Shown: positions 12,961 to 60,424 of the stretch, one piece after another
Position numbering within the stretch: position 1 is the first letter of the stretch
Layout of the letters: each line of letters begins with the position of its first letter
NCBI RefSeq assembly: GCF_006345805.1
Contig: NC_043017.1
Span: 8,990,001 to 9,054,000, forward strand
Direction of reading: 5' to 3'
DNA length: 64,000 nucleotides
Source: Octopus sinensis
Taxonomy: Eukaryota
Position numbers and translations under genes: made by a program
The notes under the pieces: generated by a model
Databases searched by the model: none
Told to the model about the DNA's origin: nothing
Seen by the model: the letters and a program-made list of their open reading frames with translations, nothing else

Positions 12961-13181
12961 CCCTTTAGTGTTCGCATTATTCTGCCAAAACTAATAATTT
13001 TTTATCCACATTGTTTTGAACTAATCACGCATTATCTTGTAGCTATGAAATTTTGATGAGGTAGCTGTTAATTTTTAAAACGAGATTGGGGGGTTGGTGT
13101 GAGAGACCAGATCTGACCAGTTTGAACATAGAATATGTGGAATACTTTTGGCCGGATATGGCTGGTTTGAATGCTAAAGGG
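12961..13181. mobile_element. TTAA-flanked MITE (piggyBac-type ends)
   Basis: ttaa|ccctttag...ctaaaggg|ttaa. Neighbouring copies at about 12600-12845 and 13190-13391; others near 21600, 28000, 50915 and 57361. Confidence 0.75.
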
Positions 13182-13517
13182 TTAAACCACATACATCTGG
13201 CCCAAATATTCTATTTGTTTCATGTTCAACCTGGCCAGATCCAGCCTCTCACACCTACCCTACACTGTCATTTTAAAAATACACAGTCATATCCTGGAAA
13301 TCTTAAAGTAATGCAAGATAATGCAGGGTCAGTTGGGAATAAGGTGAATAAATAAGCACAAATTTAATGGAGTAATTTGAGTGCTAAAGGGTTAAGTGTT
13401 TAATGCTGTCTGGTTCTCTACTGTTTCGACCAGCTCTGGGTTAAAAGTAACTTGGGTGTTGGGATGGTCCATCTGCTGGGGTGGTTGACATCCCCATCAG
13501 CCACCACCATCGTCACC

Positions 13518-18942: not shown

Positions 18943-20407
18943 TATATATATTATATATACACACACACACCACACACATATATATATATATATATACACA
19001 CACTCAAAACTATTTCTATTTCAGTCACTGAGTTATGTCTGTCCATCCACCCACAGACCCAATTAAGGGTGGCTAGGCATGCATAGGTAGGTAGACATAG
19101 GGTGTATGCGTCTTGTTCTCCTCCAGCTTCTAAACTTTCATTCATACTGCCCACGCTGTGATTCATTCAGACACCAGATAACTGCACCAATTCACCCTCC
19201 CCCATCTAATCCCCCACCATCTTGTTGCTGCTGTCTATCTACCCTGATACATATCTAATCAGCTGCACGTATGCACACATGCATGCAAACACGCACACAC
19301 TCACCTGCTCTCTCTCTCTCATCATATTTTGATGACTTTGATTTCCTGTGTTTGTTTGTTTTCCATCATTATAAACATCCCTGTCATCAATACCACTGCC
19401 ATGATCATTATCAAAACCCTCCTCCTCCTCATCATCATCATTATCATCAATGGTATTATTGTCACCACACTGCTAACAGCACATTATCGGCTTTATCATC
19501 ATCATCATAACCATCGTTCTGGCTGTTTCCAACACCATACAGCAAGAACGAGACTGACCTGTTGGCGGTTAATTGCTGTAGATTTGGCTGCTGTGTCTAG
19601 CAGATGGAGTGACCTTGTAGAGCAGTGTTCCCCCAGTCTTTTTTCTCCCACACCCCCACTTTGATCCCTACCAAAACCATATGTATGGCTCCACCATGAA
19701 TGGGCAAGGTGCATGGCCTACTGGTTAGGATGTTGCACTCGTGATCGCTAGATTGCCGGTTAGATTCCCAGACTGAGCAGCACATTGTGTTCTTGAACAA
19801 AATGGTACTTATTTTATCGACCCCCAAAAGGATGAAAGACAAAGACGACCGTGGCAGAATTTGAACTTCGAACATAAAGATGAATGAAATGCTTCTAAGC
19901 ATTTTGCTTGGTGTACTATTGAGTCTGCCAAGTCACCACCTTAATAATAATAATAATAATAATGATGATGATGATTTCAAATTTTGGCACAAAACCCCAG
20001 CAGTATCAGGGGAGTGGGTAAGTCAATTGCATTGACCCCCCCCACTCCCCAGTGTTAAACTAGCACTTATTTTATTGATCCCCCAAAAAGATGAAAAGCA
20101 AAGTCGACCTCAGCGGAATTTGAACTCAGAACATGAAGACATTTTGCCTGGCATGCTAATGATTCTGCCAGCTCACCATCTTCCACATTGACTACTTATT
20201 GACACTCGAGCTCTGGAGTAACTTGCACCTCACCAAAACATCACTGTGCCCCTCCACTTCAGAAGCAATGGGGTTGAGGGTCTTTTGTTGGCTTGTAAGG
20301 TCTTCTCATACCTGTCTTCTATTTAAAGGGTGAATATGAATGTCACCAGGTGTATAGTGGTGTAATTAATTACACAGTTCTGCTACAATATCCGTGGTCT
20401 TTTTTAA

Positions 20408-21590: not shown

Positions 21591-22328
21591 GTCATCATTA
21601 ACCCTTTAGCATTCAGATTATTCTGTCAAATATAATGTTTATTTATTCACATTGTTTGGAATTAATCATGCATTATCTCATGTCTTTGAAATTTTGATGG
21701 GATCACTCATTTTTAGTGTGACATTGTAGGGTGTGCATGTGAGGCCATATCTGGCTAGTTTGAACATAAAACCCGGGATGTCATTTGAACCGGATATGGT
21801 TGGTTTACATGTTAAAGCGATAAGGAAAAGGACAGGCTTATTGTCCAGAGATAAGAGGACAGTTGTGCACATGCGTTTCTGGTTGAGCAGCTTTCACCAG
21901 GAGGACAATTGTCTGGCCTTGTCTTCAGTAGCCAAAGGACTTAGGTTTATACAAAGCAAAGTAGAACACATGGCCTAGGTAATCAGTCATATCTAAACAA
22001 AGAATGTGGATAGTGGTATATATTTGAATAATAGAGAGAAATTCAGGTTGTGTGGTATTTGACATATGTGTTTATCTGTCCATCTCCCTATCTGCAACCA
22101 CTTCGACACCTGACACGTGGCACACTATGCACCTGTTCAGACAACATTGATTTGATGGAGAGATACTGTGCTTAATGTACAGCACATACATTTGGTCACT
22201 ATAAACAAATCATTTGTGCAGGTCATTTGGCAAAACATTGCAAAACCATCTTTCTCAACTTACAAGAGACTACCACCATATATATATATATAGTCACCCT
22301 TATTATTATTATTATATACATACATATA

Positions 22329-27200: not shown

Positions 27201-29141
27201 TTTCCACCTACCAAATCCACTTACAGAGCATTAGTTGGCCTAGGGCCATAGTAGAAGACACTTGCCCAAGGTGCCACACAGTGGAACCTAACCGCAAACC
27301 ACATCGTTGGGGAAAGTAAGCTTCTTTCTGCACAGCCACGCCTGTACCGTAGTGGGTTTTTTTTAAAGTTACTCCTCTCTTTCTCTCTCTCTCTCTCTTC
27401 CCCCCCTCCCCCACTTCTTTCCTCCGTCCCCCTCCTCTTTCACTTTCACTGACTCAACCGTTTCCCTTCTCCCACCTGCAACACAACAACACATCTTCAG
27501 CTGTTACTTATTTGTTGTTAATGATATTGTTGCTGTTGTTACTGTTTGCTCATAGTTTTGAAACAAGATTCAGAACAATGCACCCATACCTGTACCTATA
27601 TAAATAGCTTTTTTGTATTAATTAGTTACCTTTAACTGAGGTGTGTTAAGTAATTTTAATATTTCTAAAGCGAGCTACGAATAAAATATAAGTACAGCGG
27701 ATTTTGTTTCTTATATTTATCTTTATCATTTCCATAACCTATTTTATATCATGTTACTGTCCGTAAGCCTGGGTGTTGCCACCTGTAATACAGAGGAGAA
27801 AAAGAACCTGATCAGCCAGTGTCAGTTTGTGCAGGCTGCTGTCGAGGTCTCGACTGTTCTCGGACACTGCACTGGCTTGGAAGGTATCCAGGACATCAAG
27901 GCAATGATGGTGGATCAAGATGGTGTGGTTGGTAGATTTTGTTGCTGTGGTCCAGGTTGGAACCTGGCCATAATAATCTTTTCTATTCGAGGCATGAGGC
28001 CTGAAATTTGTCTGGATCTGATCAGGTTGAACATAAAACATGTAGAATATTGAGGCTGGATATGGCGAGTTTAAGTGTTAAAGGGTTAATGTTTTCCTTT
28101 TTGCTTCTTCTTGTAAAAGTACGTAAGATTGTATGACTAAAACGAAAAGATGTTTGGGAATTGTAACTCTGTTGTCTTAAAGGAAGGAAACATTGGACAA
28201 TGGAATAACACCATCTTAAATATCAAGTGATCCATCCCAAGCCATAGGCTCACAGGGCTAGTTTCCTGGATTCTGTGGTGGATGTATTGCCCCACTGGAT
28301 AGAACACCACTCCGTCGGAGGGACAACTCCTTTTTGCCAGCAGATTGGACTGGAATGATGTGAAATGAAGTGTTTTGCTCAAGAACATAATGCATTGCCA
28401 GGTCCAAGAATTGAAACCACAATCTTATGCTCATGAGTGCAGCACCCTAATCACTAAGCCATGTGCCTCCACAGTCTTTAGATATACTATATCTAAATAA
28501 AAGATTGGATGGTCATGGTTGGAATATTCTTGATCAAAGGTCTGTTGGTTTAGTGTTGATCCATGGGGCTAAACACTGACTCTGTTTCTGTACAGGGGTT
28601 GATTCATTTGACTCAAATTTTTCATGCCGGTGCCCCAGCATGGCCACAGTCTTATGACTGAAACAAGTAAAGTATAAAAGGTAATGATTTAAGGGAGATT
28701 TGACTGCTACTTGTAGCACTTTGGGCAACCACCTAATAATTGCTTGTGGTTTGTTTATGGTTGTCATCTTCTTCTGCTCCAGTTGGTCAGTTCACCATGC
28801 ATGTCCCTCCCCCTCCTGTTCCTCCCTCAACTATTGAGTTACCCTTCAACCCCTCAAAGTGTAGTGGAAGAGGACTTGGGTTCTTGTTTTCTCTGTCTAC
28901 AATGACTGACTCCTTCATTTACAACTACTCTGCCCACTCCCCCTACTCGTTGGCCCTGCTTCATTGCTTTCTGTGTGGATGTGGTGTGTGTGTTTTGGTG
29001 GGGGTAAAAAGTATTTCTCTTTGTATGTGTGGATTGATTGTGTGTGTGTGTCTATGGTTATTTGGATGTGACACTAAGTGGATGTGTTTTGTGTGTGTGT
29101 TGGGCTGGGCTTTGTTTATACCTGTGTGAAGTCATGCATGC

Positions 29142-32976: not shown

Positions 32977-34099
32977 GGAAGAGAGATAGAGAGCAGAATG
33001 GTAAAGGGCAAAATTAACATGCATACACACACACACACACACAATATATATATATATATACACAGAAGCATGTGAGCATATGTATGAGCTTGTGTAAAGG
33101 GTAGATTATAGTATATATATTATATGTGTGTATATATATATATGTGTGTGCGTGTGTATATGTATGTGTGTATGTATACATACACACATATGTATACACA
33201 CATATGTATGTGTGTATTTAGATGTTTATGTAAACATGTTTGTGTATTTGAATATATACATAAGTATGTGTGTGCGTGTGTATATATATATATACATATA
33301 TACACACACGCATACATGGGTGTATATTTAGATATATATAAGTATGTGTGTATTTACACACATGAACGCACACACGAACATGCGTTTTATTCTGGGAGAG
33401 TTAATCTACTGTTAGTAACAGAGCATTAGTTATTGTTGTTATTTAACCACAGGTTTGTCCTGATGAAGCAGACCTATAATCAAAAGACATTCCAGCTGTT
33501 GTGACCATCCTGTCTTTTTCTATGCTCATGGAACCCAAGACCACATTATCTATTGTGTCCCTTTCTAAGATGATGAAGCAAGAGAAATTTGGCTGCTATT
33601 TCTAGTACTTCAAATGGTTATTTGGTGGCTCCCTCATCGTTTTATCATTTTAACATCCACTTTTCTATGCTTGCATGTGTTAGGTGGAATTATTCATTGA
33701 TGCAGATTTTCTATGGCCAGATGCTCTTCCTGTCACCAAACCTCAGCTGTTTCCAAGCAGAATTATATCTTCCCTATGGTTCCGGGTTCAGTCCCGCTGC
33801 TTGGCACCTTGGGCAACTGTCTTCTACTATAGCCTCAGGCCAACCAAAGACTTCTGTGTGGATTTGGTAGATGGAATACACTCTTGGAAGGGTTGGTCCT
33901 AGGAAAGGCATCCAGCCGTAGAAAACCATGCCAAATCAGACTGGATCCTGGCGCAGCATGCCAGCCCAGTCAAACCGTCCGACCCATGCTAGCATGGGCA
34001 ATGATGGTGATGCATATAGTTTCTGTGTCACTGTTTGACAACCAGTGTGGATATGTTTACATCCCTGTAACTTAGCTCAAAAGGTCTCTGAATAAGGAT

Positions 34100-40878: not shown

Positions 40879-43800
40879 TATATATATACACATACACACA
40901 TAGTCATCAGCAGACACACATTCACCCAGTTGTATTCAGTTCCCAAGACTGTAAGAAATGTGAGCCGAGCCAATTCCATTGTATGAGTAATATGCAGTGG
41001 ATGGAACAACCACTGAGGCAATTGTAGTAAGGCTTATTTTGGTAATGGTAGCCCTTGTGGCGGAGTTGACGGTGGTGGTGGTGGTGGTGATGTTGGTAGT
41101 GACAGAAGAATCCATGATGGTGGCAGTGGTGGTGGTTACGTTTGTGTTGGCGCCTTGTTACTTTTTAGTCCCAAATTTTTACCCTAACGAAGCATAAGAC
41201 TGATCAAAGATTTTTCAGTCATGGAGAAGTGCCAGCACGGCTGTGGGGTTAAGGTGCCCTCTTTGCAAACATGTGGCTTTTGGGTTCAGTTCTCTGCACA
41301 GAGGCTTCTTGAGAAGATGTCTTTTTGTGTAGGCTCAGGATGGATTTGATAGATGGAAACTGTACGGAAGCACGTGTGTGGCTGTGTGGTAAGATGTTTG
41401 CTTCCCGGTCACATGGTTCTGGGTTCTGCCCATGTGTGGCACCTTGGACTGACCGAAAAGCCTTGTGAGAGGAATTAGTTGACCGAAACTGAAAGCTGCT
41501 GTATGGTTGTGTGTGTGTGTGTGACCACCACTTGACAACCAGTGTTGGTGTGTTTATGTCCCTGTAATGTAGCAGTTTGGCAAAAGAGACCGATAGAAAA
41601 AGAAAATTAATACTAGGATCGATTCATTCGACTAAAAATAAAGTCTTCAAGGTGGTGCCCCAGCATGGCCATTGTCTAATGACAGAAGCAAGTGAAAGAA
41701 AAAGTAAAAGACACACACACACACAAGTTATTTGGCTGTTATTTCTTGCTGGCTGAGGTCATCAAATTTGCCTTTCATCTTTTTGGGGTCAATAAAATAA
41801 GTACCGGTTGTAATCAACTGGACCCCTTCCCCAAAATTTCAGGCCTTGTGCCTATAGTGGAGAGGATTTCTAGCAAGTTGACCAACCTGCAGAGAGTATT
41901 TGGTTGTTGTAATTGAACAGACTTTGGCTGAAAGGCTTTCCAGTCATGACCACCCTTCTTGTTTCCATGAACACTATCCACCACTATATTTATTAACCAG
42001 TGTGATTTATCCCCTCTCCTTTTATTTTTTGAGATTATTATGTGTGTTTAAGAAACTTAGCTGTTATTTCTAGCAGGTCACTTACCCCTTTAGCAAATGT
42101 TGCTGAGTCATCTCAAGAGGGTCTCTGGATGTATGACATGGGGTTGATGGGGTCAGTTATTTGTTATGTCTATGTAGGGGTGTCAGGGCTGTTGTCCTTA
42201 CATGCTCTGGCTTTAGACTATGAGGACCCTGGTCCTCTGTGTTTTTTCTTTTTTTTTTTGTTTTCTGTTGTTTCTGCTGTTGTGTCTGCCACCCCCCACC
42301 CCCCGGCAGACTCCCTGTCCTCTTATCTGACACAAACTTCCCACCCCTCTTCTATTTGTGTCTGTCTGTTTGTCTCTATATTGCAAACTAATGTAGATTA
42401 TGTCTGTGCAGCTATTCGAACTAAGCACAATGCATCTTCACATGCATATGCCTAATGCACTTGCACACACTCACACACATACATGCATATATATACGCAC
42501 ACGCACACATACACGCACACATATATGGCAGGCTTCCTTGTAGATCATTCCATCAATTTTACTCCAAAGCTTTTGGCTGGGCCTGAAGCTACAATAGAAG
42601 GCCCTTGTCCAACGTGTGACAGACTCAGCTTGAACTTAAGACCCTGTCATAACACAGATGTGTTGGTGGTGGTGGGGGGGGGGACTCCGTTATGGTGTTC
42701 ACTTCCCAACCACATAGCCTTGGGTTCAGTCCCACTGTGTGGCACCTTGGGTAAATATATTCTATAGATCTGGGGTGACCAAAGCCTCGCTAGTGGATTT
42801 CTTAACTGGCAACTGAAAGAAGCCAGTCATGTATTTATACATGTGTGTGTGTGTGTCCCCATCCCCTTGTTAAGGATGTAAGCGAACATTATTGTTATAC
42901 AGGTGATGTTCGTTTCCAGTCTTCCAAGAAAAATATGTCTAGCTATGGGAAAATATTCCCTTGCTTGAAAACGAGCGAGGGTTGGTGACAGGAAGGGCAT
43001 CTGGTTACAGATGAAAATGTGCCACAACATTCTGCCTGACTCATGCAAGCTTGGATAAATGGAAGTGTGTGTGTGTATAAATTATATAGGTGTAGCTGTA
43101 TGGTAAGAAGCTTGCTTTCCAACCACATAGTTCTGGGTTCAGTCCCACTGCATGGTAGTTTAAGCACGTGTCTTACTATAGCTCCAGCCTGACCAAAACT
43201 GGATAGAAACTGAAAGAATCCCATTATATATATATATATATATATACATACATACACACACGTCTTTGTGTTTGTTCCTATCACCACTTTAAGATCAGTT
43301 TGTTTGTGTCCCTGTAACTTAGTGGTTCATCAAAAAAGACTAATAGAATAAGTACGAAGCTTAAAAGCAAAAAGTACGTATGGACGTTGATTTGTTTGAC
43401 TAAACTCTTCAAGGTGGTGCCCCAGCATGGCCACAATCCAATGACTGAAACACACAATAGATACAAGAAATGCTCAATCTCGTAACAACAGCAACATTAA
43501 TAATTCCGAAATGAAGTTCAGGGCCACAGATTTTGAGGTGATGGGGTGGGGAGAAATAGTTGATTATATAGACCCTGAATATTTTTCACTGGGTTCAGGA
43601 GAATGGAAAGGAAAGCCTAATTTTGGCTGGGAATTGCACTCCGATTGTAATTTTAGAGGCCTCAAGTGGCAGAGCAAACAACAACCTTTGCAACATTTCA
43701 TTTTCTCTTGTCTTACATAAGAACTGGGTGGGGTGGTGATGGGAGTGGTGGCGGTGGTGGTTGGTGCTTGGACTGAAGAGAATAACTTTGAAGAAATTTG

Positions 43801-48505: not shown

Positions 48506-50009
48506 CTCACATTCTCCAGTTCATTACACCCGTGCCACCCACTTCCCCCATTTTCGAAGGTCTACAAACAGTAGTTTCATGATGGTGGACAGTGGGTGGT
48601 GTAAGGGGTGGGTAAGTGTTTCTCTTCTACCACCACCACCACCACTGCCATTATATGCTTTTGGGGAACACCAAGACACCTTTATTCCCTCTCCTTCCAC
48701 TGATCTTTACCTGTATCATTGGTCAGTATGAAATTATTGATCCTTTCAGGAGTGGGGTTTGTATGTGGGGGAATTGCTTTTTTTTGGCGGGGTGGAGGGT
48801 CACCCCTCCCCTGTAATCCGGAATACTCCTCTATCCTCCTGTCATCATCACCACCACCACCACCACCACTACCAATCATTTATTCCCTGCCAACAAGAGA
48901 TCTTCCAGGTGATGACTTAACTTGCTAGAAATAGCAGCCAAGTTATCCCTTAAATTCACATTCCGCTGTCTGATAAAGGATACACAAGGAATGTAGTCAC
49001 AGGTATAGTAAAAGATGAGATGGTCATAGTTAGAACTCCTTTGACCATGGGCTGGCAATAGTATCAGCTGATATTATTTTCTCTTCAGAATAGTGTAAAC
49101 AAAGTTCCTCATGCTATTTTATCAACAGTTCTTTAGGGTCTGAGTTCAAATCTTGCCGAAAGTATCATTGGAGTACAGGGGTCAATATAAATGATGTTTT
49201 TGCACCTTGTACTGATATTCGAAATAATAACGAGTACAGGTAGAAAGAAAGATGTGTGTTGGAACTCATTTTGTGACCAAATAATCTTGAGTTCAACTCC
49301 ACTGCGCAGCATATGTGTTCTAACGAAGCTCTCATTTGCTCTATGCCTTGTGAGTCAATTAACCCATGCTAGCATGGAAAGCGGTCGTTAAACAATGATG
49401 ATGAAGATGATGATAGAAACTGTGCAAAAGCCTATTAAGTTTTTCTTTTACTTGTGTCGTTCTTTTGCACTGTGGCCATACTGGAGTACTGCCCTTGAAC
49501 CAACACTAGCTCTACTTATTGAAATCTGGCAGTCTATCAGTTGCTTTTTGGTAAATTGCGTGGTTAGGAGAATGTAAACACACAAATATGGGTTGTCACA
49601 CACACACACACACACGTGTGCATGATGACCTTCCACACAGTTTCTGCCTACCAGATTCACTCACAAAATATTGGTTGGCCTGGAACTGTAATAAAAGATA
49701 AAAGACGCAGGTTCCAGGTGCTGTGCAGTGAGATTGAACCTAAAGGCATGTGGTTTTGTAGTAAAGCCCTTAACTACACTGCCATATATATATAGTTTGG
49801 AGGGATATTTTATTCGGGTGGATACTATGTTAGCTCTTAGTTGGCTTCCAGATGCCAGCTAACCACAGGGGTCAGTATCCAATGTGTGTGCCTACAATTA
49901 TTTGTTAGTCACTCTATGAATTCTTCCATTGGGTAATTCTGTGTGTCCTATCCTGGACTGTAAAGGTTCCCTGCAGTGTATATTACTATTAATAATAATA
50001 GTGAGGATG

Positions 50010-50150
50010 GAACCAGTTGGCACTGGGTGATACTTATTGTCTGATTCCCATACACTGCATTAATATTCCTCACACTTTCCGTTGTGTTGTTGCCTTTATT
50101 GAAATCATAAAGCAAAATATGCCGAATGTGCTTCTTTGTCACTTCCATTA
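50010..50150 (-). mobile_element. Mariner transposase N-terminal HTH remnant
   Basis: MEVTKKHIRHILLYDFNKGNNTTESVRNINAVYGNQTISITQCQ. Confidence 0.85.
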
Positions 50151-50539
50151 TAGCTTTGAAAAAATAACTGTTAAAATTGAACTGCACTCTTCAAAACTTG
50201 CACTAAGAATAAGGTCAAGGTAAAATTACTACCTGCTTTTATATCAAGTTGTTGCAAGTAGTTTATCCTTTCCCCTTCCGACTTTTAGTTCATGCAATTG
50301 AAAAAAACCACACTATGGGATGACCCAATATACATAAAATCTGGTTTAACCCTCTTCATTCTCTAAATGTATCCTCAAATATAACTCAGACCTCTATCTT
50401 TACATTAATCAGTATATATTTCCTCGCTTCACACTGATATCACACATTCTTCAACCATAATTCTGTTAGTCATGTTTTATATGTATGGGTAACATAAGAT
50501 TACAAATCACTAAGCACAAAAACAAAAAACAAAAGCTAA

Positions 50540-50915
50540 GAATACCTAACAAATCACCCAATCTAAATGCAATTTCAGAGACATGATTCAATGCCCTTTG
50601 AATGGAAAATGTCTGTTGAAAGAAATAGTATACAGAGCAGACATAGAACTATCTGGCAGACTGTATTGTAAAAACATGTATACCAGGCTGACTGAAAGCA
50701 TATTTATAGTTAAAGTCATGCATAACATCTATTTGTTTAGATCTAGAAATAACTACCCTGAGCAGATTTAGTATTTGCAGACTATACTGTAAAAGGTTAA
50801 CTGAAAACACCTTAAGGCTAAATTTGCACATCACATACATTTGCTTAGATCTCGAAATAACTATACAGAGCTGACCATACTGTAAAAATGTACATCAGGT
50901 TAACTGAGAACATCT
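50540..50915 (+). mobile_element. Penelope-like GIY-YIG endonuclease remnant, locally triplicated
   Basis: CPLNGKCLLKEIVYRADI...MYTRLTESIF resembles the PLE motif CPLxGxCLxxxIVYxA...YIGLTE. Confidence 0.7.
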
Positions 50916-52671
50916 TTTAGCATTCAGATTACTCTGTGAAGGTAATGCTTATTTGTTCACATTATTTTGAATTAATCATGTAGCTTTGAGATATCATTGA
51001 AGTGATTGTTTATTTTAAGAATGATGCTGTAGGGTACATGTGAAAGGCCAGATCTTTCACAGTTTGAACATAAAACGGGTAGAATATTTGGGTCAGATGT
51101 GGCTGGTTCAAATGCTAAAGCATTAAATATAAATTCATAAATCACATCCATTCATTTCGATTCAGAAATATGCTTAATATCACATCTCTTTCAAAGTATA
51201 TTTGGTTCTTTAGAAGTTAGTTGAACAAAGTAATTGCATAATAAGATGGGAGTATTGTCGTAAAGGCAGAGACATTGGTCATAGCTATTGTCAATTGTGT
51301 GTCACTAGGAAAGAAAAGAAACTGTTTCCATTCATTGGGAACTACCACCCTTTACATGTGACACATGTAGTCTACATTAATGAAACAGTGTGCTTGCGTG
51401 TTCCTGGTGCCATGTTGGATTAAGGCAAATTTTTTTCTTGTAGCTTAATTGAACGAAAATCTCACAAAAATTTGACTTGTATGACATTTGATAAGCTTTC
51501 TTCATCTTTGCTGTGTACACACTCATGCATGCACATATGTGCACACACACACACACACACACACATTAATATATTATATAGGCATGTGGTTAAGAAACCA
51601 GCCACTTGGTTTCAGATTCAATGCTGTTATATGTCCTCCTTGGGCTATGTTTGTACAGTTTAAGTAAGGGTGTTAAAGTGTTAGTGATATAAATTATACT
51701 CTATACTATGTATTGAGTACTCTCTTTTTCTTGGTTGTCATAAACTATGTGGTGTGTTTGATATATGAATGTTCTCACTCTCCTCCCCCACCCTCTCCTT
51801 TCATGACTCCCTGCCCCCACAGGGTTATGCCACCTTACCCCTTTCTGCTTCAATTACCTTCTAATGTTTTTTTATTCAATCTAAATAAGGGTAGAAAGGT
51901 AATGGGGTGACTGTCACTGTCTTTCTTTACATTGTTCTCCTCCCTCTCAGAACACCCCTCATACACAAAGCACTTTTTTTCTCTCTCTCTCTCTCTCTCT
52001 CTCCCCTCTGCCTTCTCCTCTTTCATAATGTCAATGAGAGACCTACACATGAACTGAACACCCCCTTTGTTTTTCTGGTTTACATTCCTCCTCTTCTCTC
52101 TTCTGTTCTCTCTCTCTCTCTCTCTCTCACTCTTTCTCTGTCTCGCTATTTTTCTGTCTGTCTCTCTCTCTCCCTCCATTCAACCATTAACACAATTGAA
52201 TTGAATTGGAGCTCCTTGACTGCTTTTTTTTGATGGTGACGATAGTGATGCTGATGACTACAATGATGATGATATTGGTAGTTTTGATGATGATGATGAT
52301 GCTTGTGGTAGCCGTGTGGGGTGGGGTGATTGAGGTGGTGAAGGTACAGTTGATGCTTATGGTGCTGGTGGTGGTGGTAGTATTAGTAGCTTGTTGTATG
52401 TGTTGACAACAGTTCAGGACCCCAACTTAGCTCTCTAAGGAGCCACCCCTGGAATGTCACACTGTGTGTGTGTGTGACTGTTCAGTAGTTCAAGACCTTA
52501 ACCCAGATGGTGGAATTTCTATCTGGCAGGTGTGTTTATATATATATATATGTTGATGTATGTTTGTTTGTTTGTGTGTGTGGTCCAGATCATGTGTTTG
52601 TTTGTATGTATATCTATCAAAATGCTAATTTTCTGATTGACTTAGTATTTTTTTTTTTGCGTGTGTGTGTT

Positions 52672-52721
<50 letters not shown>

Positions 52722-53874
52722 TGTATATATGTAGATGTATATATATGTGCGTAGGGGTAAAATGTAAAAGAATGGAGGAAATTGTACCAAATTTATTCTT
52801 TGGTTAGGACCATTTCAACTTGGTGTGAGTCAGATAAATCATTTGACATTTATTTGATAGGTTTATATCATCATCACCGTTAAACGTCCATTTTCCATGC
52901 TAGCATGGGTTGGGCGGCTCAACCGGGGTCTGGGAAGCCAGGAGGCTGCACCAGGATCCAGTCTGATCTGGCAGTGTTTCTACATTGGATGCCCTTCCTA
53001 ATGCCAACCACTCCGTGAGTGTAGTGGGTACTTTTTACGTGCCACCAGCACAGGAGTCAGAGGAGGTTGGCCACGATCGGTCGGTGCTTTATACGGGCCA
53101 CAAGAGGGAAAGCAATTTCCTTGACCTGTTATAGGGATCTCCAAGACTGGTGGGAAGGACAGAGGAAGGTATCATTAAATGGGAAACCTGACCCAAATGC
53201 TTGAAACGAAATGGCACCCTAGATGCCCTATGGTGGTGCTAGATGGAGGAATGGGTGATGCCAACCACCAAGGTACCAAGCTAGCCATAATGGGATTTTG
53301 TCTTAGTGAAGCAGAGGCTGAATAAATACCACAAGGCATTCAGTCCCATGTTCTTAAAGTTCTATAAATCACTTGTCTTTGATTGATAGCTTTTTTTATT
53401 TGACCCCATAATGATGGAAGACTAAGTTGACCTCTGCTGGATTTGAATTTAAGAGCGTAAAGAGTAGGCAAACGGTAATGCTTCAAATCATTTTGTCCCA
53501 AGTCCTGTTTGACTCTTTTAATACTGACATGCCTGAACAACTCCTCCCTTCATTGGTTTCATGGAGCTTCCCCAGCCCTTGTCAGATGTGATTAAGTTGT
53601 TTAAAAAAAAGGTAGGAAAGAGTATGTTAAACCTACTTTAGTTAATTATTTTCCTTTTCTTTTTTGTTCATTTTTAAGATAATATTTTTACTTTATTTTT
53701 TAAAAATATTATTTAATAGCTATTTTGTTGTGGCTTTGTAGTTTAATTAAACTTAAATAAAAATATTACATATTGAAATCTCAATAATATCAGGTTTCAG
53801 TTGAGCCTCTGAAATACTCTCTTAGTTCTAATTTTGGTTCTAAATACTGTTTTTTTTTTTTCCAATCAACGAAC

Positions 53875-54049
53875 CCCGCACTTCAACAATGTGACCCCCG
53901 AGAAGATACCTCTTCAAGGGTTCACTATATAAAACATTAGAGACAGTTTTGTAGCTGGTTCTATTTGTGAAAGTGTGGGACAGTAATGTGTGTGATGCAG
54001 GACTTGGGGCAGTAACGCTGACCTCGAGTAGTTTAGTCACAGTACATGG
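53875..54049 (+). ncRNA. Box H/ACA RNA copy 1 (putative scaRNA, U1 pseudouridine-6 guide)
   Basis: Basal stem cccgcactt (53875-83) pairs with aagtgtggg (53971-79). H box ACAGTA at 53980-85. The 3' hairpin has lower stem tgtgat/gtcaca and upper stem acttgggg/cctcgagt. ACA at 54044-46 lies 14 nt from the pocket top, and similarity to the paralogues stops about 3 nt later. Confidence 0.75.
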
Positions 54050-54294
54050 CTTTATATATTTGAGGGAGATTTGGTTGCTATTTCTAGCAATGTTTTCTTG
54101 TTGCTTTATTCATTAGGTGAAGTGTTTTCGGGATATGAAATCAAAAGTAACTCTGATTTGTCAAAATCCACTCAGAAGGCTTTGGTCTTCTATAGTAGAA
54201 GACACTTGCCCAAGGTTCCACACAATTGGACTGAACCTGGCACCATGTGGTTCGTAAGCAAGCTACTTACCACATAGCCACTCCTACGCCTATA

Positions 54295-54340
<46 letters not shown>

Positions 54341-54360
54341 TATATATATGTATATATATG

Positions 54361-54825
54361 TATGAGGCATCTGATGTAGTATGCAAGAGAGATGTCATGT
54401 GATGCAAATGGATGAGGACAGCTGCATAAAGACGAGCTGATCTCTAACTGTGGAGGGAACCTGTGGAAGACATGGGACAAGGTGGTGAAGCATGATCTTC
54501 GAATGTCCCCCCCCCCCCGGCAATGACAAGAGACCTTTGGTAATATGCTGTGCTTGAAAAGACCTGTCAAGCTATGTAAAATTGCACTCGTGGCCAACGC
54601 TGGTGTCATGTAACTGGCTTCCATACCAGTGGCATGTAAAAAGCTCCCATTACTCTCTGGGAGTGGTTGGCATTAGGAAGGGCATCCGGCCATAGAATCC
54701 ATGCTATATCAGACTGAAATTTGGTGCAGGTCCCCAGCTTACCAGTTTTCAGTCAAACCATCTAACCCATGCCAGCATGGAAAAACGGACGTCAAATGAT
54801 GATGATGATGATTATGATGATGATC
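54361..54825 (+). mobile_element. RTE-type LINE 3' end between H/ACA copies 1 and 2
   Basis: GIxCSMQER...HVMQMDEDSCIK...SLTVEGTCGR, then the 3'UTR and (gat)n tail. Confidence 0.75.
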
Positions 54826-55384
54826 ATGTGTGTTTCAAAATTTCACAAATTCAAGAAGGGCATATATCATCATCATTACAGTTGACAGAAATCTGGACCA
54901 GTGTGGGGTCATTTGGTGGAAGGTAGAAACTGTTTAATGAAGTGGAATAAATTAGCTTGTGAGAAGGAAGAGGGGAAGTGTAACATTTAGGGTAGTAATT
55001 ACTCTTTTCCTTCGTTAAAGAGAAATGAAATGCTATACAGGGAAGGGGAGTGGGTGGGCTCCTTGTTGTTGCTTCGGTACAGGTAAGTCATGCCTGAGCA
55101 AAAGCTACGACCTTCCTTCCTTATTCCAGCTGTCTCCAATCTGTCTTCTGTTCAGACATAATGTATCTAGAATTACAGTTGTATTTTTTTTTGTGTTTTC
55201 AGTGTAATCTTCCTTTCTTAAGAGAGTCAGGTGTGATTAGAGGTAGATTTAGTTATTTGTAGCAGTTTCCCCTCATTGACTTGTTGGACTAGGTGTGCTT
55301 AAGATGTTATCAAGAGTATCCATTGCATGTTAAACTGCTTTTGTAATGTTGTTCGGTAATTTATTTGCAAAAATCGAGCAGTAA

Positions 55385-55549
55385 TCCACGCCGTGTACCC
55401 TGTTAGGGTCACTTAACAGGGGGAATTAAATCTAGATTAGAACCAGTTTTGTAGCTGGTCCGATCTGTGAAAGTGTGGGACAGTAAATTGTGTGACGCGG
55501 TACTTGGGGCAGTAACTCTGATCTCGAGTAGTAGAGTCACAGTACATAC
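55385..55549 (+). ncRNA. Box H/ACA RNA copy 2 (putative scaRNA paralogue with altered pocket)
   Basis: ccacgc pairs with gtgtgg. H box ACAGTA at 55480-85. Stems tgtgac/gtcaca and tacttggg/ctcgagta. ACA at 55544-46. The core is colinear with copy 1 at an offset of exactly 1500 bp. Confidence 0.75.
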
Positions 55550-56067
55550 ACAGTTTTATCTTTTTGAGGAAGATTTGGTTGCTATTTCTAGCAGGACCTT
55601 TTCTACTATCTACTCACACACACACACACACACATGCACATGGCAGGCTTTCACACAGTTTCCATCTACCAAAATCACTAACAAGGAATTGATTGGCCCA
55701 GGGCTATAGTGGAAGATGCTTGTCTATGGTGCTGCACTGTGGTACTAAACGCAGAATCATGGATTGTAAAATGGGCTTTGTAACCCTACAGCCATGTTTC
55801 TGCCTGTATGTTTGTATCTATATTGAATAACACACATCAAAGTTTCATAGCCTGTGTTATATGGGATTTGAGTTGGGTCTCAGAAAGTATCTTATCTAAA
55901 TTAACTATTGCTTAACCATTTTCTCACACCTTCTCCGATGAGAGGACATAAGGAATATTCTGGAAACAGTTGTAAGACCTATTTATAAATGTTCCAAAAT
56001 CTTCACAGCCTTGGTTTTTTTTTATCTCATTCTGAAAAAATAAATTATATATATATATATATATATA

Positions 56068-56467
56068 GGCGCAGGAGTGGCTGTGTGGTAAGTAGCTTGC
56101 TAACCAACCACATGGTTCTGGGTTCACTCCCACTGCGTGGCATCTTGGGCAAGTGTCTTCTGCTATAGCCCCGGGCCAACCAATGCCTTGTGAGTGGATT
56201 TGGTAGACAGAAACTGAAAGAAGCCTGTCGTATATATGCATATATATATGTATGTGTTTGTGTGTCTGTGTTTATCCCCCTAGCATTGCTTGACAACCGA
56301 TGCTGGTGTGTTTATGTCCCCGTCACTTAGCGGTTCGGCAAAAGAGACCGATAGAATAAGTACTGGGCTTACAAAGAATAAGTCCCGGGGTCGACTTGCT
56401 CGACTAAAGGCGGTGCTCCAGCATGGCCGCAGTCAAATGACTGAAACAAGTAAAAGAGTAAAAGAGT
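56068..56467 (+). mobile_element. Young full-length SINE family A between H/ACA copies 2 and 3
   Basis: Starts ggcgcaggagtggctgtgtggtaagtagc and ends aagtaaaagagtaaaagagt. Inserted after (TA)n. Confidence 0.85.
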
Positions 56468-56613
56468 ATATATATGTTTTTGTTTTCATTTTTCATTGTG
56501 TTCAAGGTTTTTTTGGTGTCCTGTACCCATATATGCATGTATATATATACATATAGATGTAGGTATGTACATATATGTATGTATATATGCATATGTTTAT
56601 ATATTATTTATGT

Positions 56614-56651
<38 letters not shown>

Positions 56652-57631
56652 AGGATTGAAGTGGCATTTGAACATTCATAATAGAATGGGAAATGTAGCC
56701 AACAATCAAATGAGACTTTATTACTGCAGTGTGTGTGTGATCAGCTCTTCAAATGTGTTTCAGGGCTGATAAGTCATTTAAGATCTCTGGCTAGGAAAGA
56801 GCTATTATAGGTACAAGAAGAGGTCAATCTCTGCAAGGAGCACTCAACCCACCGCACACAGATATATATATATCACCTGTGTTTTTATATTTTTTGTAGA
56901 ATTAAACAGGACTCTAATGATATATATATATATATATCATCACATTTGTCAAAAATCTAGGCTACATTAGTTCAAATGTGCTGGGTCATTTGGTGGATGA
57001 TGGAAAGATTTAATCATGTGGAATAAATTGGTTTGTGAGGGGGGGGGGAAGAGAAGTGTAACATTTAGGGCATTAATTACTGTTTTGCCTCATTAAAGAG
57101 AAATGAAATAGTATATGGTCTTGTTATTGTTATTGTTGAGGTTAGGTAGCTATGACTGAGTAAAATTTTGATCTGCCATTGCAGCCAGCTCTTGTTCAGA
57201 CATAATGTAGTTTGAATGAGTATTTTTTAGTGTAACTTTTTAAAGTCAGTAGGAAGTGATTTGAGGAAGATTTAGCTGTTGTTTCTAGCCGGTTTTCCCA
57301 TAGACTTGTCAGACAAAGTGTTTCTAACACATCGAGTCAAAAGGATACGTTGTAAATTCATCCATTAGCATTGAGATTACTCTGTCAAATGTAATTGTTT
57401 GGCTTAACGATGCATTTATCTCAAAGCTTCAAGATTTCAGTGATGTGATTGTTGATCGACATTGTAGGGTAGGTGCGAGAGGCCAGATTTGGCTGGTTTA
57501 AAAATAAAACAAGTTGAACATTTTGGGTCGGATTTGGCCAGTTTAAATGCTAAAGGGTTAAACGAATTTTTTAATGTTTTTGTTGTTGTTGATGATGGTC
57601 TTTGAAAAAAACAAAAAAAAAACATCCGTAA

Positions 57632-57866
57632 TCCACACTGTCTCCTATTAAGTTATCTTCATAGGGGACACTGTTTCCCCTGTTAAGGTTACTCAACAGG
57701 GCTCACACTCTGTATTTTGTCAAGTTACCTTAACAGGGGAAACTAAACCTAAACTGAGGACAGTTTTGTAGCTGGTTCCTTCTGTGGAAGTGTGGGACAG
57801 TAAAGATTGTGACACAGGACTTGGGGCAACGAGTCTGCTACCGAGTAGTATAGTCACAATACATCG
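57632..57866 (+). ncRNA. Box H/ACA RNA copy 3 (putative scaRNA, best U1 pseudouridine-6 match)
   Basis: tccacact pairs with agtgtggg. H box ACAGTA at 57797-802. Stems tgtgac/gtcaca and acttgg/ccgagt. ACA at 57861-63. Pocket strands cagg (57815-18) and agtat (57847-51) are complementary to U1 AUACU-[U A]-CCUG. Confidence 0.8.
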
Positions 57867-60424
57867 CTTCCTATATTTTATACACACATGCAACGTATAC
57901 ATACTTGCATACTCTCTCTTTACTCTTTTACTCTTTTACTTGTTTCAGTCATTTGACTGCAGCCATGCTGGAGCACCGCCTTTAGTCGAGCAAATCGACC
58001 CCAGGACTTATTCTTTATAAGCCCAGCACTTATTCTTTGTAAGCCCAGCACTTATTCTATCAGTCTCTTTTGCCGAACCGCTATACGCATGAATACACTC
58101 ACACACACACACACATTGAATGTTCTGTCTCATTTTGTCTTTCTTTCCCTTTTATACATTTATCAGGCTCTACACACTTTGGCTACAAATAATTATTGTA
58201 TGTTTTGTCATTTCTGAAGATAGTGTTAGTGTATGTATACGACAGAGTGTCAACAATTTAAACTGGGTATATGTAGCATCAGATGTAGTGTGCAAGAGAG
58301 AAGACTGTGCTGGTATGGCTATTTAACCCTCTCATTACTGTGTTTCTGTTGAGATGCTCTGTGTTTCTTTCAATTACTTTAAATATAACAATGAATTTAG
58401 TAAAATAACTTAATTATTCTGCTGGTCTCTTTTGCCGACCCGCTAAGTTACTGGGACACGAACATGTCAACACCAGTTGTCAAGCATTGATGGTGACAAA
58501 GACAGGCAGAAAGGCATACACATACACACATAGATATACATACATATATATGTATGAATGTATGTTGAATCCCACTGCATGGCACCTTGGGCAACCAAAG
58601 CTTTGTGATTGGATTTGGTGGACGGAAACTGAAAGAAGCCCTTTGTGTGTGTGTGTATACATACATGCAGACACACATATATACATGTATATATACGCAC
58701 ACATGCATACAACGGGCTTATATACACACACACACACACAATGAGCTTCTTCCAGTTTCTGTCTACCAGATTCACTCACAAGACTTTAGTTGGCCAAGGC
58801 TATAGTAGAAGACACTTGCCCAAGGTGCCATGCAGTAGGACTGAACCTGGAACCATGTGGTTGGGAAGTGAGCTTCTTACCGCACAACCATGCTTGCATG
58901 TATGTCCTGTGTGCGTGTGTATGTCTGTTTATCTTGTGTTACCATTGCTTAACAACTGGTGTTACTTGGTTTATGTTCCTGTCACTTAGATATCCAGCAA
59001 AATAGACCAATCGAAGAAGCGCCAATGCTTAAAAAAACAACAACAACCCAACAAATATGTACTGGGGTCAGTTTGGTTGACTACCCTTCAAGGTGGTGCT
59101 CCAGCATGGCCGCAGTCCAACAATTGGGACAAGTGAAAATGATAGAAGGTATTAAAGCTATGTTTGTGCTACTCTGCTTGTGTCTATACTTGTAGCCCTT
59201 TGTCTGTGCCTGTTTATTCGTTTTATTAATACCCTGTATCCTTTTAGTTTGCCCCACAACACTCTCGGAACAGTAAGTCACTATGTGTGTGTGTTTGCAT
59301 ATCTGTGTGTGTGTGTGTGTCTTTGATGTGCTTCTGTGTCTGTCTCTGTGTGTAGGGAAGACATTATGCTAATAAAATGGTAATATGAAGTCTTTCAAAA
59401 AGCTAATCTTTAATGTTCAACTTGGGGGTAAATGTGATATGTCCTGCGTTCTCAAATTGAGTCTACTGCGCTCGCACACTCTCTCTTTACACACACACAT
59501 GCACACTAACACAACATATACATACACATGCTTGCACATGTGTGTGTGTGTATATATATATATATACATGTGTGTATGTGTGTGTACACATAATTTTATA
59601 CATCTATATATATGTGTGTGTTTATATATATATGACCTAGAACTCTTTTCTCTTGTTTTGTGGGGAAGAAAGGGGTGAAGAGAGAGAGAGAGAGAGAGAG
59701 TAAGAGTGAAGGGTTGTCTCATGGAGGCATGGGTGGGTGCTGTACTCTGAGAATTCATGATTAGAAGAATAGATGAAGCTTAAGGGTGTGTGTATGTGTG
59801 TGTGTGTGAGGACAGGGTGTTAGTAGGACCAGGGTATTTACTTTCTACCCTTCTCTGCATCTCTCTCCTGTTATTTCTTAGCATCTCCACCTGCTGTTGG
59901 GAGAAAGTAGTAATGGTGGTGGCAGTAGGAGGAGGAGGGAGAGATGAGAGAGAGAGAGAGAGAGAGAGCAGTAAAGGGGTGGTTTTTTCCACCTTCCACC
60001 CACCTCACTTCATCTTCTAATCTCCCACTGTTGTCTCCTGGCCATCTCCCCCTCCCCTCAGTCTAAGAATTTTAATCCCCACTTCTCTCTTCTCTTCCAC
60101 CCAACTTGTCTGAAGACTTTAGGGGTCTCCTTTCACTTCTACAGGATTGGAATTGTGTAAATGGTGATGGTGGTGGTAGTAGTGGTGGTGGTGGTGGTAG
60201 TTGTGGTGGTATGTTTTGGACTTCTTAATAGGAAGCAGCTGTGTTGTCCCCCAATCCCCCCCTCACTTTATCTTTACTCTGTTTCAGTGTATCCCTGTCC
60301 CTTCTTTCACTCACAGACTCTTTCTATCTTTCTTTCTCTCTCTCCCTCACTCCACCTCATGTCTCTATGTCCCCTCCCTTGTTGAACTTAGACTCTTTTC
60401 ATCTTCTCTTCACACTTCATCTCA

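What the first reader, a model, noticed from the sequence alone, without database searches (positions are those of the whole stretch)
53875..57866. Tandem triplet of long box H/ACA RNAs hidden among repeats
Seen: three + strand paralogues of 175, 165 and 235 nt share an indel-free core of about 105 nt. The spacing from motif to H box is 36 nt and from H box to ACA is 64 nt in all three. All keep ACAGTA (ANANNA), an ACA followed by loss of similarity after about 3 nt, and two stems maintained by G-U/Watson-Crick swaps. Established: this is the hairpin-H-hairpin-ACA architecture. Inference: a locally amplified sno/scaRNA cluster, probably unannotated because it is short and buried in SINEs and LINEs.
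Basis: partly seen in the sequence, partly recalled or inferred. Interest (0 to 1): 0.85.

Follow-up and report, generated by a model that had tools for sequence, protein, structure and literature searches.

The report
Three tandem H/ACA-like RNA elements
Three related 165-235-base stretches in an octopus-type genome fold, on one strand only, like box H/ACA guide RNAs. They are probably unannotated lineage-specific snoRNA-like genes or their relics, but I could obtain no expression, target or cross-species evidence.

Summary
Three + strand paralogues (53875-54049, 55385-55549, 57632-57866) share an indel-free core of about 105 nt. All have ACAGTA 36 nt after the CAGTTTTG motif and ACA 64 nt after that. 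The + strand folds far better than the - strand. A 7-bp stem closes the 5' domain directly before ACAGUA. A 58-nt 3' hairpin has a 5+6-nt internal loop, and its upper stem ends 14 nt before ACA. Substitutions avoid the stems (5/34 paired versus 15/24 unpaired columns, p=2e-4).

A simple H/ACA rule scan of about 259 kb of octopus strand sequence found nothing as strong as copies 1 and 3.

Several points argue against a canonical snoRNA:
- The 5' domain is a branched 95-165-nt junction.
- The core shows no two-sided covariation.
- No Rfam family is reached (best is SNORA22, 20 bits against a cut-off of 80).
- No convincing rRNA target was found.
- Similarity after ACA is partly due to a genome-wide 33-nt motif.

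Genome-wide copy number, expression and orthologues could not be tested: three protein-based routes to cephalopod DNA found nothing.

Verdict: a probable lineage-specific, orphan H/ACA-like RNA cluster or its relic. This is a plausible new member of a known kind, of moderate-to-low interest.

The parts
53875..54049 (+). Copy 1 (175 nt). P1 5' strand 53875-53883; hairpin Hp-a 53896-53919; hairpin Hp-b core 53944-53957; P1 3' strand GUGUGGG 53973-53979; H box ACAGUA 53980-53985; 3' hairpin 53991-54041 (pocket 53997-54001 and 54030-54035); ACA 54044-54046.
   Evidence: Full-length fold -65.5 kcal/mol, z=-4.9, against z=-1.8 for the - strand. P1 and 3' hairpin pair probabilities are 0.97-1.0 and the H box is unpaired, but ACA is predicted to be paired in an extension of the lower stem. 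Passes the rule scan with a 3' hairpin of -22.0 kcal/mol and a 9-bp 5' stem. Weak full-length Rfam match to SNORA22, 20 bits, E=0.17.
55385..55549 (+). Copy 2 (165 nt). P1 5' strand 55385-55391; Hp-a 55398-55421; Hp-b core 55444-55457; H box 55480-55485; 3' hairpin 55491-55541; ACA 55544-55546.
   Evidence: Fold -62.4 kcal/mol, z=-4.7. Stem probabilities about 1.0 and ACA unpaired at 0.81-0.95. In my reading it fails the rule scan only because the MFE puts one extra pair inside the pocket.
57632..57866 (+). Copy 3 (235 nt; a 165-nt alternative starts at 57702). P1 5' strand 57632-57638, or 57702-57708; Hp-a triplicated at 57643-57666, 57678-57701 and 57715-57738; Hp-b core 57761-57774; H box 57797-57802; 3' hairpin 57808-57858; ACA 57861-57863.
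   Evidence: Fold -93.1 kcal/mol, z=-6.5. Passes the rule scan with -19.9 kcal/mol and an 8-bp 5' stem. Two apical pairs of the 3' hairpin are broken. Both candidate P1 5' strands pair 7/7 with GUGUGGG.
54059..54088 (+). Dispersed 33-nt motif TTTGAGGGAGATTTGGTTGCTATTTCTAGC, 13 nt downstream of ACA of copy 1. The same motif lies at 55563-55592 after copy 2, and at 57260-57289 and about 55238-55267 upstream of copies 3 and 2.
   Evidence: The 21-nt core of the motif matches 12 times in the window on both strands, against 0.01 expected. The flanks are unrelated in most pairs. Five further copies lie in 65 kb of O. vulgaris and O. bimaculoides DNA.
54906..55037 (+). Block A, a conserved island of the duplicated unit upstream of copy 2. 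Its partner 56983-57115 lies upstream of copy 3. The function is unknown.
   Evidence: 80.6% identity over 134 nt, while most of the sequence between islands aligns poorly or not at all. Each is followed by a GT: CAG|GTAAGT at 55084 and GAG|GTTAGG at 57151, read.
55149..55296 (+). Block B, a repeat unit that ends in the dispersed motif. Its partner is 57193-57321. It is related to the tandem units at about 8650-9070 on the - strand.
   Evidence: 67% identity between the two units. nhmmer hits at 9041-8851 and 8785-8667, E=9e-8 and 5e-5. Alignment A4.
57356..57625 (+). Repeat insertion with an A-rich tail that ends 6 nt before the first base of copy 3.
   Evidence: 57359-57562 matches 50911-51127 at 69%, and there are further copies near 13.1 kb, 21.6 kb and 28.0 kb. 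The A-rich run is read.

Best explanation
The three elements are paralogous copies of one structured small RNA, read from the + strand, that has the box H/ACA layout.

The layout is as follows. A 7-9-bp closing stem (P1) encloses a 5' domain made of two hairpins (Hp-a and Hp-b). The hinge carries ACAGUA, which fits the H box pattern ANANNA. A 58-nt 3' hairpin has a 5+6-nt internal loop whose upper stem ends 14 nt before ACA.

Inferred mechanism: the RNA would be cut out of a longer + strand transcript, most likely an intron, by exonucleases. Dyskerin, Nop10, Nhp2 and Gar1 bound to the hairpins and boxes would set the ends, and the 3' loop would act as a pseudouridylation pocket.

The copies arose by local tandem duplication. 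The pocket differs in all three and no rRNA target was found, so they are best described as lineage-specific orphan H/ACA-like RNAs. Copy 3 may be decaying.

Shown: the paralogy, the strand-specific fold, the box positions and distances, and the way substitutions avoid the stems. Inferred: transcription, processing, protein binding and guide function.
For: (1) Strand asymmetry. RNAalifold gives -28.6 kcal/mol for the + strand and -7.2 for the - strand. Full-length z-scores are -4.7 to -6.5 on the + strand against about -1.8 on the - strand for c1 and c2. Several stem pairs are G-U, which cannot form on the other strand.

(2) P1 pairs 7/7 in every copy. C/U and A/G swaps on its 5' strand face the invariant GUGUGGG that abuts ACAGUA. 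Pair probabilities are about 1.0.

(3) The 3' hairpin matches the published H/ACA description of 55-70-nt hairpins, H = AgAnnA, and a target U 13-15 nt from the box (PMC5207380). Here there are 58 nt between the boxes and 14 nt from the upper stem to ACA.

(4) Variable columns fall in loops. In the 3' hairpin 5 of 34 paired columns vary against 15 of 24 unpaired columns, Fisher p=2.4e-4.

(5) Hp-a keeps its helix despite divergence. 88% of cells are paired and 3 pairs changed on both sides, against a shuffle mean of 1.0, reached by 23 of 500 shuffles.

(6) My rule scan found 9 background hits in about 259 kb of octopus strand sequence. The best background 3' hairpin was -15.6 kcal/mol, against -22.0 for c1 and -19.9 for c3.

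(7) The only Rfam hit on copy 1 alone is an H/ACA family matched end to end (SNORA22).

(8) Constraint. The duplicated units are old enough that sequence between conserved islands no longer aligns, yet the first 43 nt of the core (53944-53986, Hp-b through the H box) is 91-93% identical.

(9) A repeat inserted 6 nt upstream of copy 3 would displace any upstream promoter. That fits release from a longer transcript better than an independent gene.

(10) The elements are not coding. Variable sites fall 8/8/9 or 8/9/8 on the three codon positions in every frame, and no protein homologues were found.
Against: - The 5' domain is a branched junction of 95-165 nt, not a 55-70-nt hairpin with a clear pocket.
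- In the core 17 of 22 pairs never vary and none changes on both sides, so covariation neither supports nor contradicts the fold.
- No Rfam family reaches its threshold.
- No convincing complementarity to conserved eukaryotic rRNA was found. The best match is 10/11 pairs including four G-U.
- The pocket is short (5+6 nt) and differs in all three copies.
- The ACA of copy 1 is predicted to be paired.
- Similarity continues after ACA.
- Copies 1 and 2 are followed by a genome-wide repeat motif, and copies 2 and 3 are preceded by a repeat unit. The whole could therefore be a composite repeat.
- No data on transcripts, RNA ends, protein binding or orthologues were reachable.
Confidence: 0.45

Rival explanations
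1. A low-copy composite repeat or retroposon-like module. In this reading the core, the 33-nt tail motif and Blocks A and B form one repeat family. Its RNA or DNA happens to have, or was derived from, an H/ACA-like fold, as in snoRNA retroposons, and the copies here are not functional guide RNAs.
For: Copies 1 and 2 end 13-17 nt before a motif found 13 times in the window and 5 times in 65 kb of two other Octopus genomes. Copy 1 shares only the last ~218 nt with unit 2 (53872-54089, by inspection; blastn aligns 53936-54089), which resembles a 5'-truncated copy. Block B is a repeat also present at 8.6-9.1 kb. snoRNAs that became SINE-like retroposons are documented in mammals, including about 40,000 copies in platypus (PMC2832892).
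Against: No further core copy exists in the 64 kb or in 65 kb of other octopus DNA, while true SINEs recur dozens of times. Units 2 and 3 are collinear with shared unique flanks, which indicates segmental duplication rather than separate insertions. I saw no target-site duplications or poly(A) at the copy ends. There are no pol III boxes, and the core contains a T4 run. The power is low, however: 129 kb cannot exclude a family of fewer than about 50,000 copies in a genome of roughly 2.7 Gb (size from my own knowledge).
Confidence: 0.25
2. Structured modules of another kind of + strand RNA. Examples are domains of a long non-coding RNA or of an intron, which fold and are under constraint but are not H/ACA RNPs. 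The ACAGUA and ACA would then be incidental.
For: The strand-specific fold and the avoidance of stems by substitutions argue for an RNA structure in general, not for H/ACA in particular. The most conserved block, CAGUUUUGUAGCUGGU, has no role in the H/ACA model. The 5' domain is branched. No target was found.
Against: Box identity, box position next to the stems and the 14-nt distance are all kept in three copies that have diverged 15-28% in the 3' hairpin. This combination is rare in background DNA. The only Rfam similarity is to an H/ACA family.
Confidence: 0.17
3. A neutral remnant of a segmental duplication with a chance fold and no function.
For: There are only three related sequences. 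In the core 17 of 22 pairs never vary, which is what recent common descent gives without any constraint. Block A is as conserved (80.6%) as the c2-c3 core.
Against: Conservation is strongly uneven. The Hp-b to H box segment (53944-53986) is 91-93% identical, while the rest of the duplicated units aligns at 67% or not at all. Variable sites are concentrated in loops, p=2.4e-4. Hp-a shows compensatory changes. The fold z-scores are -4.7 to -6.5.
Confidence: 0.1
4. Mutually exclusive coding exons on the - strand, or microRNA precursors.
For: One - strand frame is open through all three cores, giving ORFs of 66, 43 and 60 aa.
Against: Variable sites are spread evenly over codon positions in every frame. 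No protein homologue was found at E<=10. The - strand does not fold. The 3' hairpin has a 5x6 internal loop and Hp-a has only 10 bp, and I judge both unsuitable for Drosha/Dicer substrates.
Confidence: 0.03

Closest known systems
Canonical intron-encoded box H/ACA snoRNAs (as described in PMC5207380)
   Same: The order of elements is the same: hairpin domain, ACAGUA hinge box, 58-nt hairpin with an internal loop, then ACA. The upper stem ends 14 nt before ACA. There is no sign of an upstream promoter of its own.
   Different: The 5' element is a branched domain of 95-165 nt rather than a 55-70-nt hairpin. No target, no family match and no evidence of expression were obtained.
Human AluACA RNAs (PMC5207380)
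   Same: [quoted passage not shown] Their function is unknown and they accumulate at low levels.
   Different: AluACA RNAs derive from the right arm of Alu, a high-copy SINE, and carry CAB boxes. The elements here show no other copy in 129 kb of octopus DNA and no ugAG in any terminal loop.
snoRNA retroposons (snoRT/snoRTE) and cis-duplicated snoRNA paralogues (PMC2832892)
   Same: snoRNA families commonly expand by local (cis) duplication or by retroposition. Copies 1 and 2 carry a dispersed repeat motif just downstream.
   Different: No poly(A), target-site duplication or dispersed copies were seen here. Units 2 and 3 are collinear segmental duplicates.
Rfam SNORA22 (RF00414)
   Same: It is the only family hit on copy 1 alone. 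The match runs end to end (model positions 1-134) with ACA aligned to ACA.
   Different: The score is 20 bits against a gathering score of 80, with E=0.17, and copy 2 is not matched. This is a resemblance of architecture, not membership.

Membership tests
Box H/ACA RNA | Hairpin-hinge-hairpin-tail secondary structure | tested here: inconclusive
   The 3' hairpin (58 nt) and the closing stem P1 have pair probabilities of about 1.0 in all copies. The 5' element, however, is a three-way junction of 95-165 nt rather than one hairpin.
Box H/ACA RNA | H box ANANNA in a single-stranded hinge directly after the 5' stem | tested here: met
   ACAGUA is invariant at 53980, 55480 and 57797 and follows GUGUGGG of P1 directly. 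Its unpaired probability is 0.81-1.0 in c1 and c3, and 0.38-0.89 in c2.
Box H/ACA RNA | ACA box after the 3' hairpin, 3 nt from the mature 3' end | tested here: inconclusive
   ACA is invariant, 2 nt after the lower stem (54044, 55544, 57861). It is predicted unpaired in c2 and c3 but paired in c1. The mature 3' end cannot be known from DNA.
Box H/ACA RNA | Internal loop (pocket) whose upper stem ends 13-16 nt from the box | tested here: met
   For the 3' hairpin there is a 5+6-nt loop, with 14 nt from the upper stem to ACA in all three copies. No clear pocket exists in the 5' domain.
Box H/ACA RNA | Bipartite complementarity of the pocket to rRNA or snRNA around a uridine | tested here: inconclusive
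   I scanned 80 environmental eukaryotic rDNA contigs. The best recurrent site was the c2 pocket on the conserved 18S sequence GGUUCUAUU[U]UGUUGG, with 10/11 pairs of which four are G-U, and the c1 and c3 pockets do not match this site (by inspection). This is near chance level. Cephalopod rRNA and snRNAs were not available.
Box H/ACA RNA | Stable RNA bound by dyskerin, Nop10, Nhp2 and Gar1 | not testable with these tools
   No expression or binding data were reachable.
Box H/ACA RNA | Conservation and covariation across species | not testable with these tools
   No orthologous cephalopod DNA could be fetched. Among the three paralogues the core shows 0 two-sided changes. Hp-a shows 3.
Any curated Rfam family | Score at or above the family's gathering threshold | tested here: not met
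   There are no matches at gathering thresholds in the window. The best sub-threshold hit is SNORA22, at 20 bits against 80.
H/ACA scaRNA | CAB box (ugAG) in a terminal loop | tested here: not met
   The terminal loops read UUGU (Hp-b), AUAC/GUCA/UUAU/GUUA/UUAC (Hp-a) and GUAAC / GUAACU / ACGAGUC (3' hairpin). None contains UGAG.
SINE or snoRNA-derived retroposon | Many dispersed copies with poly(A) or a LINE-type tail and target-site duplications | tested here: inconclusive
   There are no copies outside the cluster in 64 kb plus 65 kb, and no target-site duplications or poly(A) were seen. A dispersed 33-nt motif does follow copies 1 and 2. The amount of DNA searched is too small to bound the copy number usefully.

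The most novel reading that the evidence does not exclude
The elements represent a cephalopod-specific class of H/ACA-like RNA with three unusual properties. The 5' domain is a modular, expandable junction, shown by the palindromic hairpin triplicated in copy 3. The 3' pocket diversifies between tandem copies. The RNA is coupled to a genome-wide 33-nt motif that reads like a branch point, pyrimidine tract and CAG acceptor. Together this would be a snoRNA-plus-splice-acceptor cassette that spreads and seeds new guide RNAs in a lineage known for heavy RNA-level innovation.
Probability: 0.08. Interest if true: 0.6.

Novelty: new member of a known kind. Interest (0 to 1): 0.3.

Why it matters
My literature search found little on snoRNAs in cephalopods, and curated models missed these elements entirely. 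If they are expressed, they would add a lineage-specific H/ACA family with an unusual branched 5' domain. They would also give a small, dated example of guide-pocket divergence after tandem duplication. If they prove to be repeat-derived, they would be an invertebrate counterpart to AluACA RNAs or snoRNA retroposons. In either case the finding is an annotation-level addition, not a new principle.

Tried and rejected
(1) Rfam. I ran it at gathering thresholds on the whole window, and at E<=10 on the 4.8-kb region and on copies 1 and 2 alone. Only microsatellite-driven miRNA look-alikes and one weak SNORA22 hit appeared.

(2) Finding cephalopod DNA through translated ORFs.
- An exact look-up of eight local ORFs found nothing. 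It may have been hampered by non-ATG starts.
- A search with both open frames of all three cores gave no hit at E<=10.
- A search with 3,909 aa of unique ORF pieces from 45.5-64 kb gave no hit.
- Four window ORFs are not on record.
- A positive control with SINE-derived ORFs did reach Octopus vulgaris and O. bimaculoides proteins. That yielded 65 kb of their genomes, with no core copy.

(3) An exact-pattern scan of metagenome contigs for the core found nothing.

(4) A covariance model built from the three cores found only the three copies in 129 kb.

(5) A literature search for the core sequence and for cephalopod snoRNAs found nothing relevant.

(6) The idea that the motif after ACA marks mini-exons of a host gene was weakened. 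The motif is dispersed on both strands across the genome. It still reads like a 3' splice-site module, so the idea is not excluded.

(7) The coding-exon reading was rejected.

(8) I judged a TATA-like box upstream of copy 1 (53926) and B-box-like bases in copy 2 irrelevant, because neither is conserved among the copies.


Full report
WHAT IS THERE

The window is repeat-rich eukaryotic DNA of octopus type. SINE-derived ORFs from it match hypothetical proteins of Octopus vulgaris (90% identity) and O. bimaculoides. Of the window, 45% has another copy elsewhere in the window.

Between 53.87 and 57.87 kb lie three + strand copies of one element. The repeat finder puts 53887-54047, 55387-55547 and 57704-57864 in register without gaps, at 71-75% identity. 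blastn gives 85% identity for c1-c2 and 80-81% for the other two pairs.

The core (53944-54050 and its equivalents) is free of indels and has 91% mean column identity. The spans 53875-54049, 55385-55549 and 57632-57866 are 175, 165 and 235 nt. ACAGTA starts 36 nt after the start of CAGTTTTG, and ACA starts 64 nt after the start of ACAGTA, in all three.

No other copy exists in the 64 kb by pattern search, nhmmer or covariance model.

STRUCTURE

The + strand folds and the - strand does not. RNAalifold on the core gives -28.6 against -7.2 kcal/mol. Full-length + strand folds are -65.5, -62.4 and -93.1 kcal/mol, with z = -4.9, -4.7 and -6.5 against dinucleotide shuffles. The - strands of c1 and c2 have z of about -1.8.

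All three copies adopt the same plan:
- A closing stem P1 is formed by CCCGCAC, UCCACGC or UCCACAC pairing with the invariant GUGUGGG.
- P1 encloses a palindromic hairpin, Hp-a, and a second hairpin, Hp-b. The Hp-b core CAGUU-UUGU-AGCUG is invariant.
- ACAGUA follows P1 directly.
- A 3' hairpin comes next. It has a 6-bp lower stem (UGUGAY/GUCACA), an internal loop of 5+6 nt and an 11-bp upper stem.
- Two bases and then ACA follow.

The upper stem ends 14 nt before ACA. P1 and both stems of the 3' hairpin have pair probabilities near 1.0. The exception is the upper stem of c3, at about 0.65, where the two innermost pairs I checked have probability 0.

Human H/ACA RNAs are described as two 55-70-nt hairpins with H (AgAnnA) and ACA boxes, and a target uridine 13-15 nt from the box (PMC5207380). 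The 3' half of the element fits this description. The 5' half does not: it is a branched domain of 95-165 nt.

IS THE STRUCTURE UNDER CONSTRAINT?

Within the 3' hairpin, 5 of 34 paired columns vary against 15 of 24 unpaired columns (Fisher p=2.4e-4). The same hairpin is predicted from each sequence alone, so this result does not depend only on the alignment-based fold.

P1 keeps 7/7 pairs in every copy through C/U and A/G changes on its 5' strand.

In the core, formal covariation is absent. There are 0 two-sided changes, 3 one-sided changes and 2 broken pairs, both in copy 3.

Hp-a is different. Across its five versions (one each in c1 and c2, three in c3), 88% of cells pair and three pairs changed on both sides. 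The shuffle mean is 1.0, reached by 23 of 500 shuffles. Its U-G pairs work only on the + strand.

Conservation is uneven. The Hp-b to H box segment (53944-53986) is 91-93% identical and the 3' hairpin 72-84%. Most of the surrounding duplicated sequence aligns at 67% or not at all.

Variable sites show no codon periodicity in any frame. The open - strand frame is therefore not a coding exon.

HOW RARE IS THE ARCHITECTURE?

I wrote a rule scan with these requirements:
- ANANNA, then 50-75 nt, then ACA;
- an unbranched hairpin between them, closed next to both boxes;
- an internal loop of at least 3+3 nt, with 13-16 nt from the upper stem to ACA;
- a 5' stem of at least 6 bp ending at the H box.

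It gave 7 hits in both strands of the window. Two were copies 1 and 3, with 3' hairpins of -22.0 and -19.9 kcal/mol and 5' stems of 9 and 8 bp. The best of the other five was -15.6 kcal/mol. In my reading copy 2 fails only because its MFE places one extra pair in the pocket.

In 65 kb of other octopus DNA there were 4 hits, the best at -13.6 kcal/mol. Weak look-alikes therefore occur about once per 29 kb of strand. Nothing of this strength appeared in about 259 kb.

COMPARISON WITH KNOWN FAMILIES

No Rfam family is reached. On copy 1 alone the single hit is SNORA22, matched end to end at 20 bits against a gathering score of 80 (E=0.17). Copy 2 gives nothing relevant. No terminal loop carries a CAB box.

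The pockets predict these targets:
- c1: UAAACU-U-N-CCUGC
- c2: UCUACU-U-N-ACCGC
- c3: UAUACU-U-N-CCUGU

A scan of 80 environmental eukaryotic rDNA contigs gave only one recurrent site, on a conserved 18S stretch. It pairs 10/11 with the c2 pocket but four of those pairs are G-U, which is near chance level. Octopus rRNA and snRNAs were not available, so this test is weak.

SURROUNDINGS

Copies 2 and 3 sit in collinear duplicated units, 54906-55593 and 56983-57878. The units share Block A (80.6% identity) and Block B (67% identity).

Block B ends in a 33-nt motif, and so does the sequence just after copies 1 and 2. The consensus is about ATTTRAGGGAGATTTGGCTGCTATTTCTAGC, often followed by AG. 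The motif occurs 13 times in the window on both strands, and its 21-nt core gives 12 matches against 0.01 expected. Most copies have unrelated flanks. It occurs 5 more times in 65 kb of O. vulgaris and O. bimaculoides DNA.

The motif reads like a branch point, a pyrimidine tract and a CAG acceptor. Its nature is unknown.

A repeat with an A-rich tail ends 6 nt before copy 3. This argues against an upstream promoter for that copy. It fits release from a longer transcript, or decay of the copy. SINEs flank every copy.

WHAT COULD NOT BE DONE

Three protein-search routes, an exact ORF look-up, four contig look-ups and a metagenome scan all failed to reach orthologous or paralogous DNA.

The absence of extra copies in 129 kb cannot exclude a family of tens of thousands of copies in a genome of about 2.7 Gb (size from my own knowledge).

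VERDICT

The H/ACA reading is the best single explanation (about 0.45). It rests on architecture, strand-specific folding and stem-sparing substitution, not on expression, targets or cross-species covariation.

The rivals are a repeat-derived module (0.25), another kind of structured RNA (0.17), a neutral remnant (0.10), and coding exons or miRNA precursors (0.03).

If real, the cluster is a new lineage-specific member of a known class with an unusual 5' domain. snoRNA paralogue clusters arising by cis-duplication are well known (PMC2832892). Interest is therefore moderate to low.

Noticed in passing
window 8672-8692(-), 8855-8875(-), 9035-9055(-), 19581-19601, 28697-28717, 33586-33606, 41729-41749, 42054-42074, 48924-48944(-), 54059-54088, ~55238-55267, 55563-55592, 57260-57289; L002 ~21932(+) and ~20615(-); L003 ~14780, ~14442, ~12339 (all -): A motif of about 33 nt, ATTTRAGGGAGATTTGGCTGCTATTTCTAGC(AG), is dispersed on both strands. 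It occurs about once per 5-13 kb, in the window and in O. vulgaris and O. bimaculoides DNA. Most copies have unrelated flanks on both sides. It reads like a branch point plus pyrimidine tract plus CAG acceptor. I could not tell whether it is a transposon terminus, a retroelement tail or a functional signal.
   Followed up: partly
window 8650-9070, - strand: Three tandem units of about 183 nt each end in the dispersed motif. They are related to Block B (55149-55296 and 57193-57321). Tandem Repeats Finder did not report them because the copies are only about 70% alike.
   Followed up: partly
window 54906-55037 and 56983-57115: Block A is a conserved island (80.6% identity) in the duplicated units upstream of copies 2 and 3. 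It contains GGAATAAATT and TAATTA. Further downstream come CAG|GTAAGT (55084) and GAG|GTTAGG (57151). It could be a promoter, an exon of a host transcript, or another RNA. It has no Rfam hit.
   Followed up: no
window 57640-57740: Inside copy 3, the unit of about 36 nt that carries the P1 5' strand and hairpin Hp-a is triplicated head to tail. This gives three alternative closing-stem strands and three hairpins. It accounts for copy 3 being 70 nt longer than copy 2.
   Followed up: yes
window 54286-54370 and 56522-56602: Sub-threshold Rfam hits to mir-297, mir-1277, mir-3149 and similar families fall on (TA)n/(TG)n microsatellites. They are composition artefacts.
   Followed up: yes
window 49951-50190 (-); also 7403-7564 (+), 10991-11221 (-), 12361-12582 (-): These are decayed mariner/Tc1-type transposase fragments. 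The first matches Pfam HTH_48, the Mos1 transposase HTH domain, at E=1.9e-14. The others only look like transposase pieces by eye, and Pfam did not confirm them.
   Followed up: partly
window 57356-57625, with relatives at 50911-51127, 13081-13187, 21597-21772 and 28027-28089: A short interspersed repeat with an A-rich tail has inserted 6 nt upstream of copy 3.
   Followed up: partly
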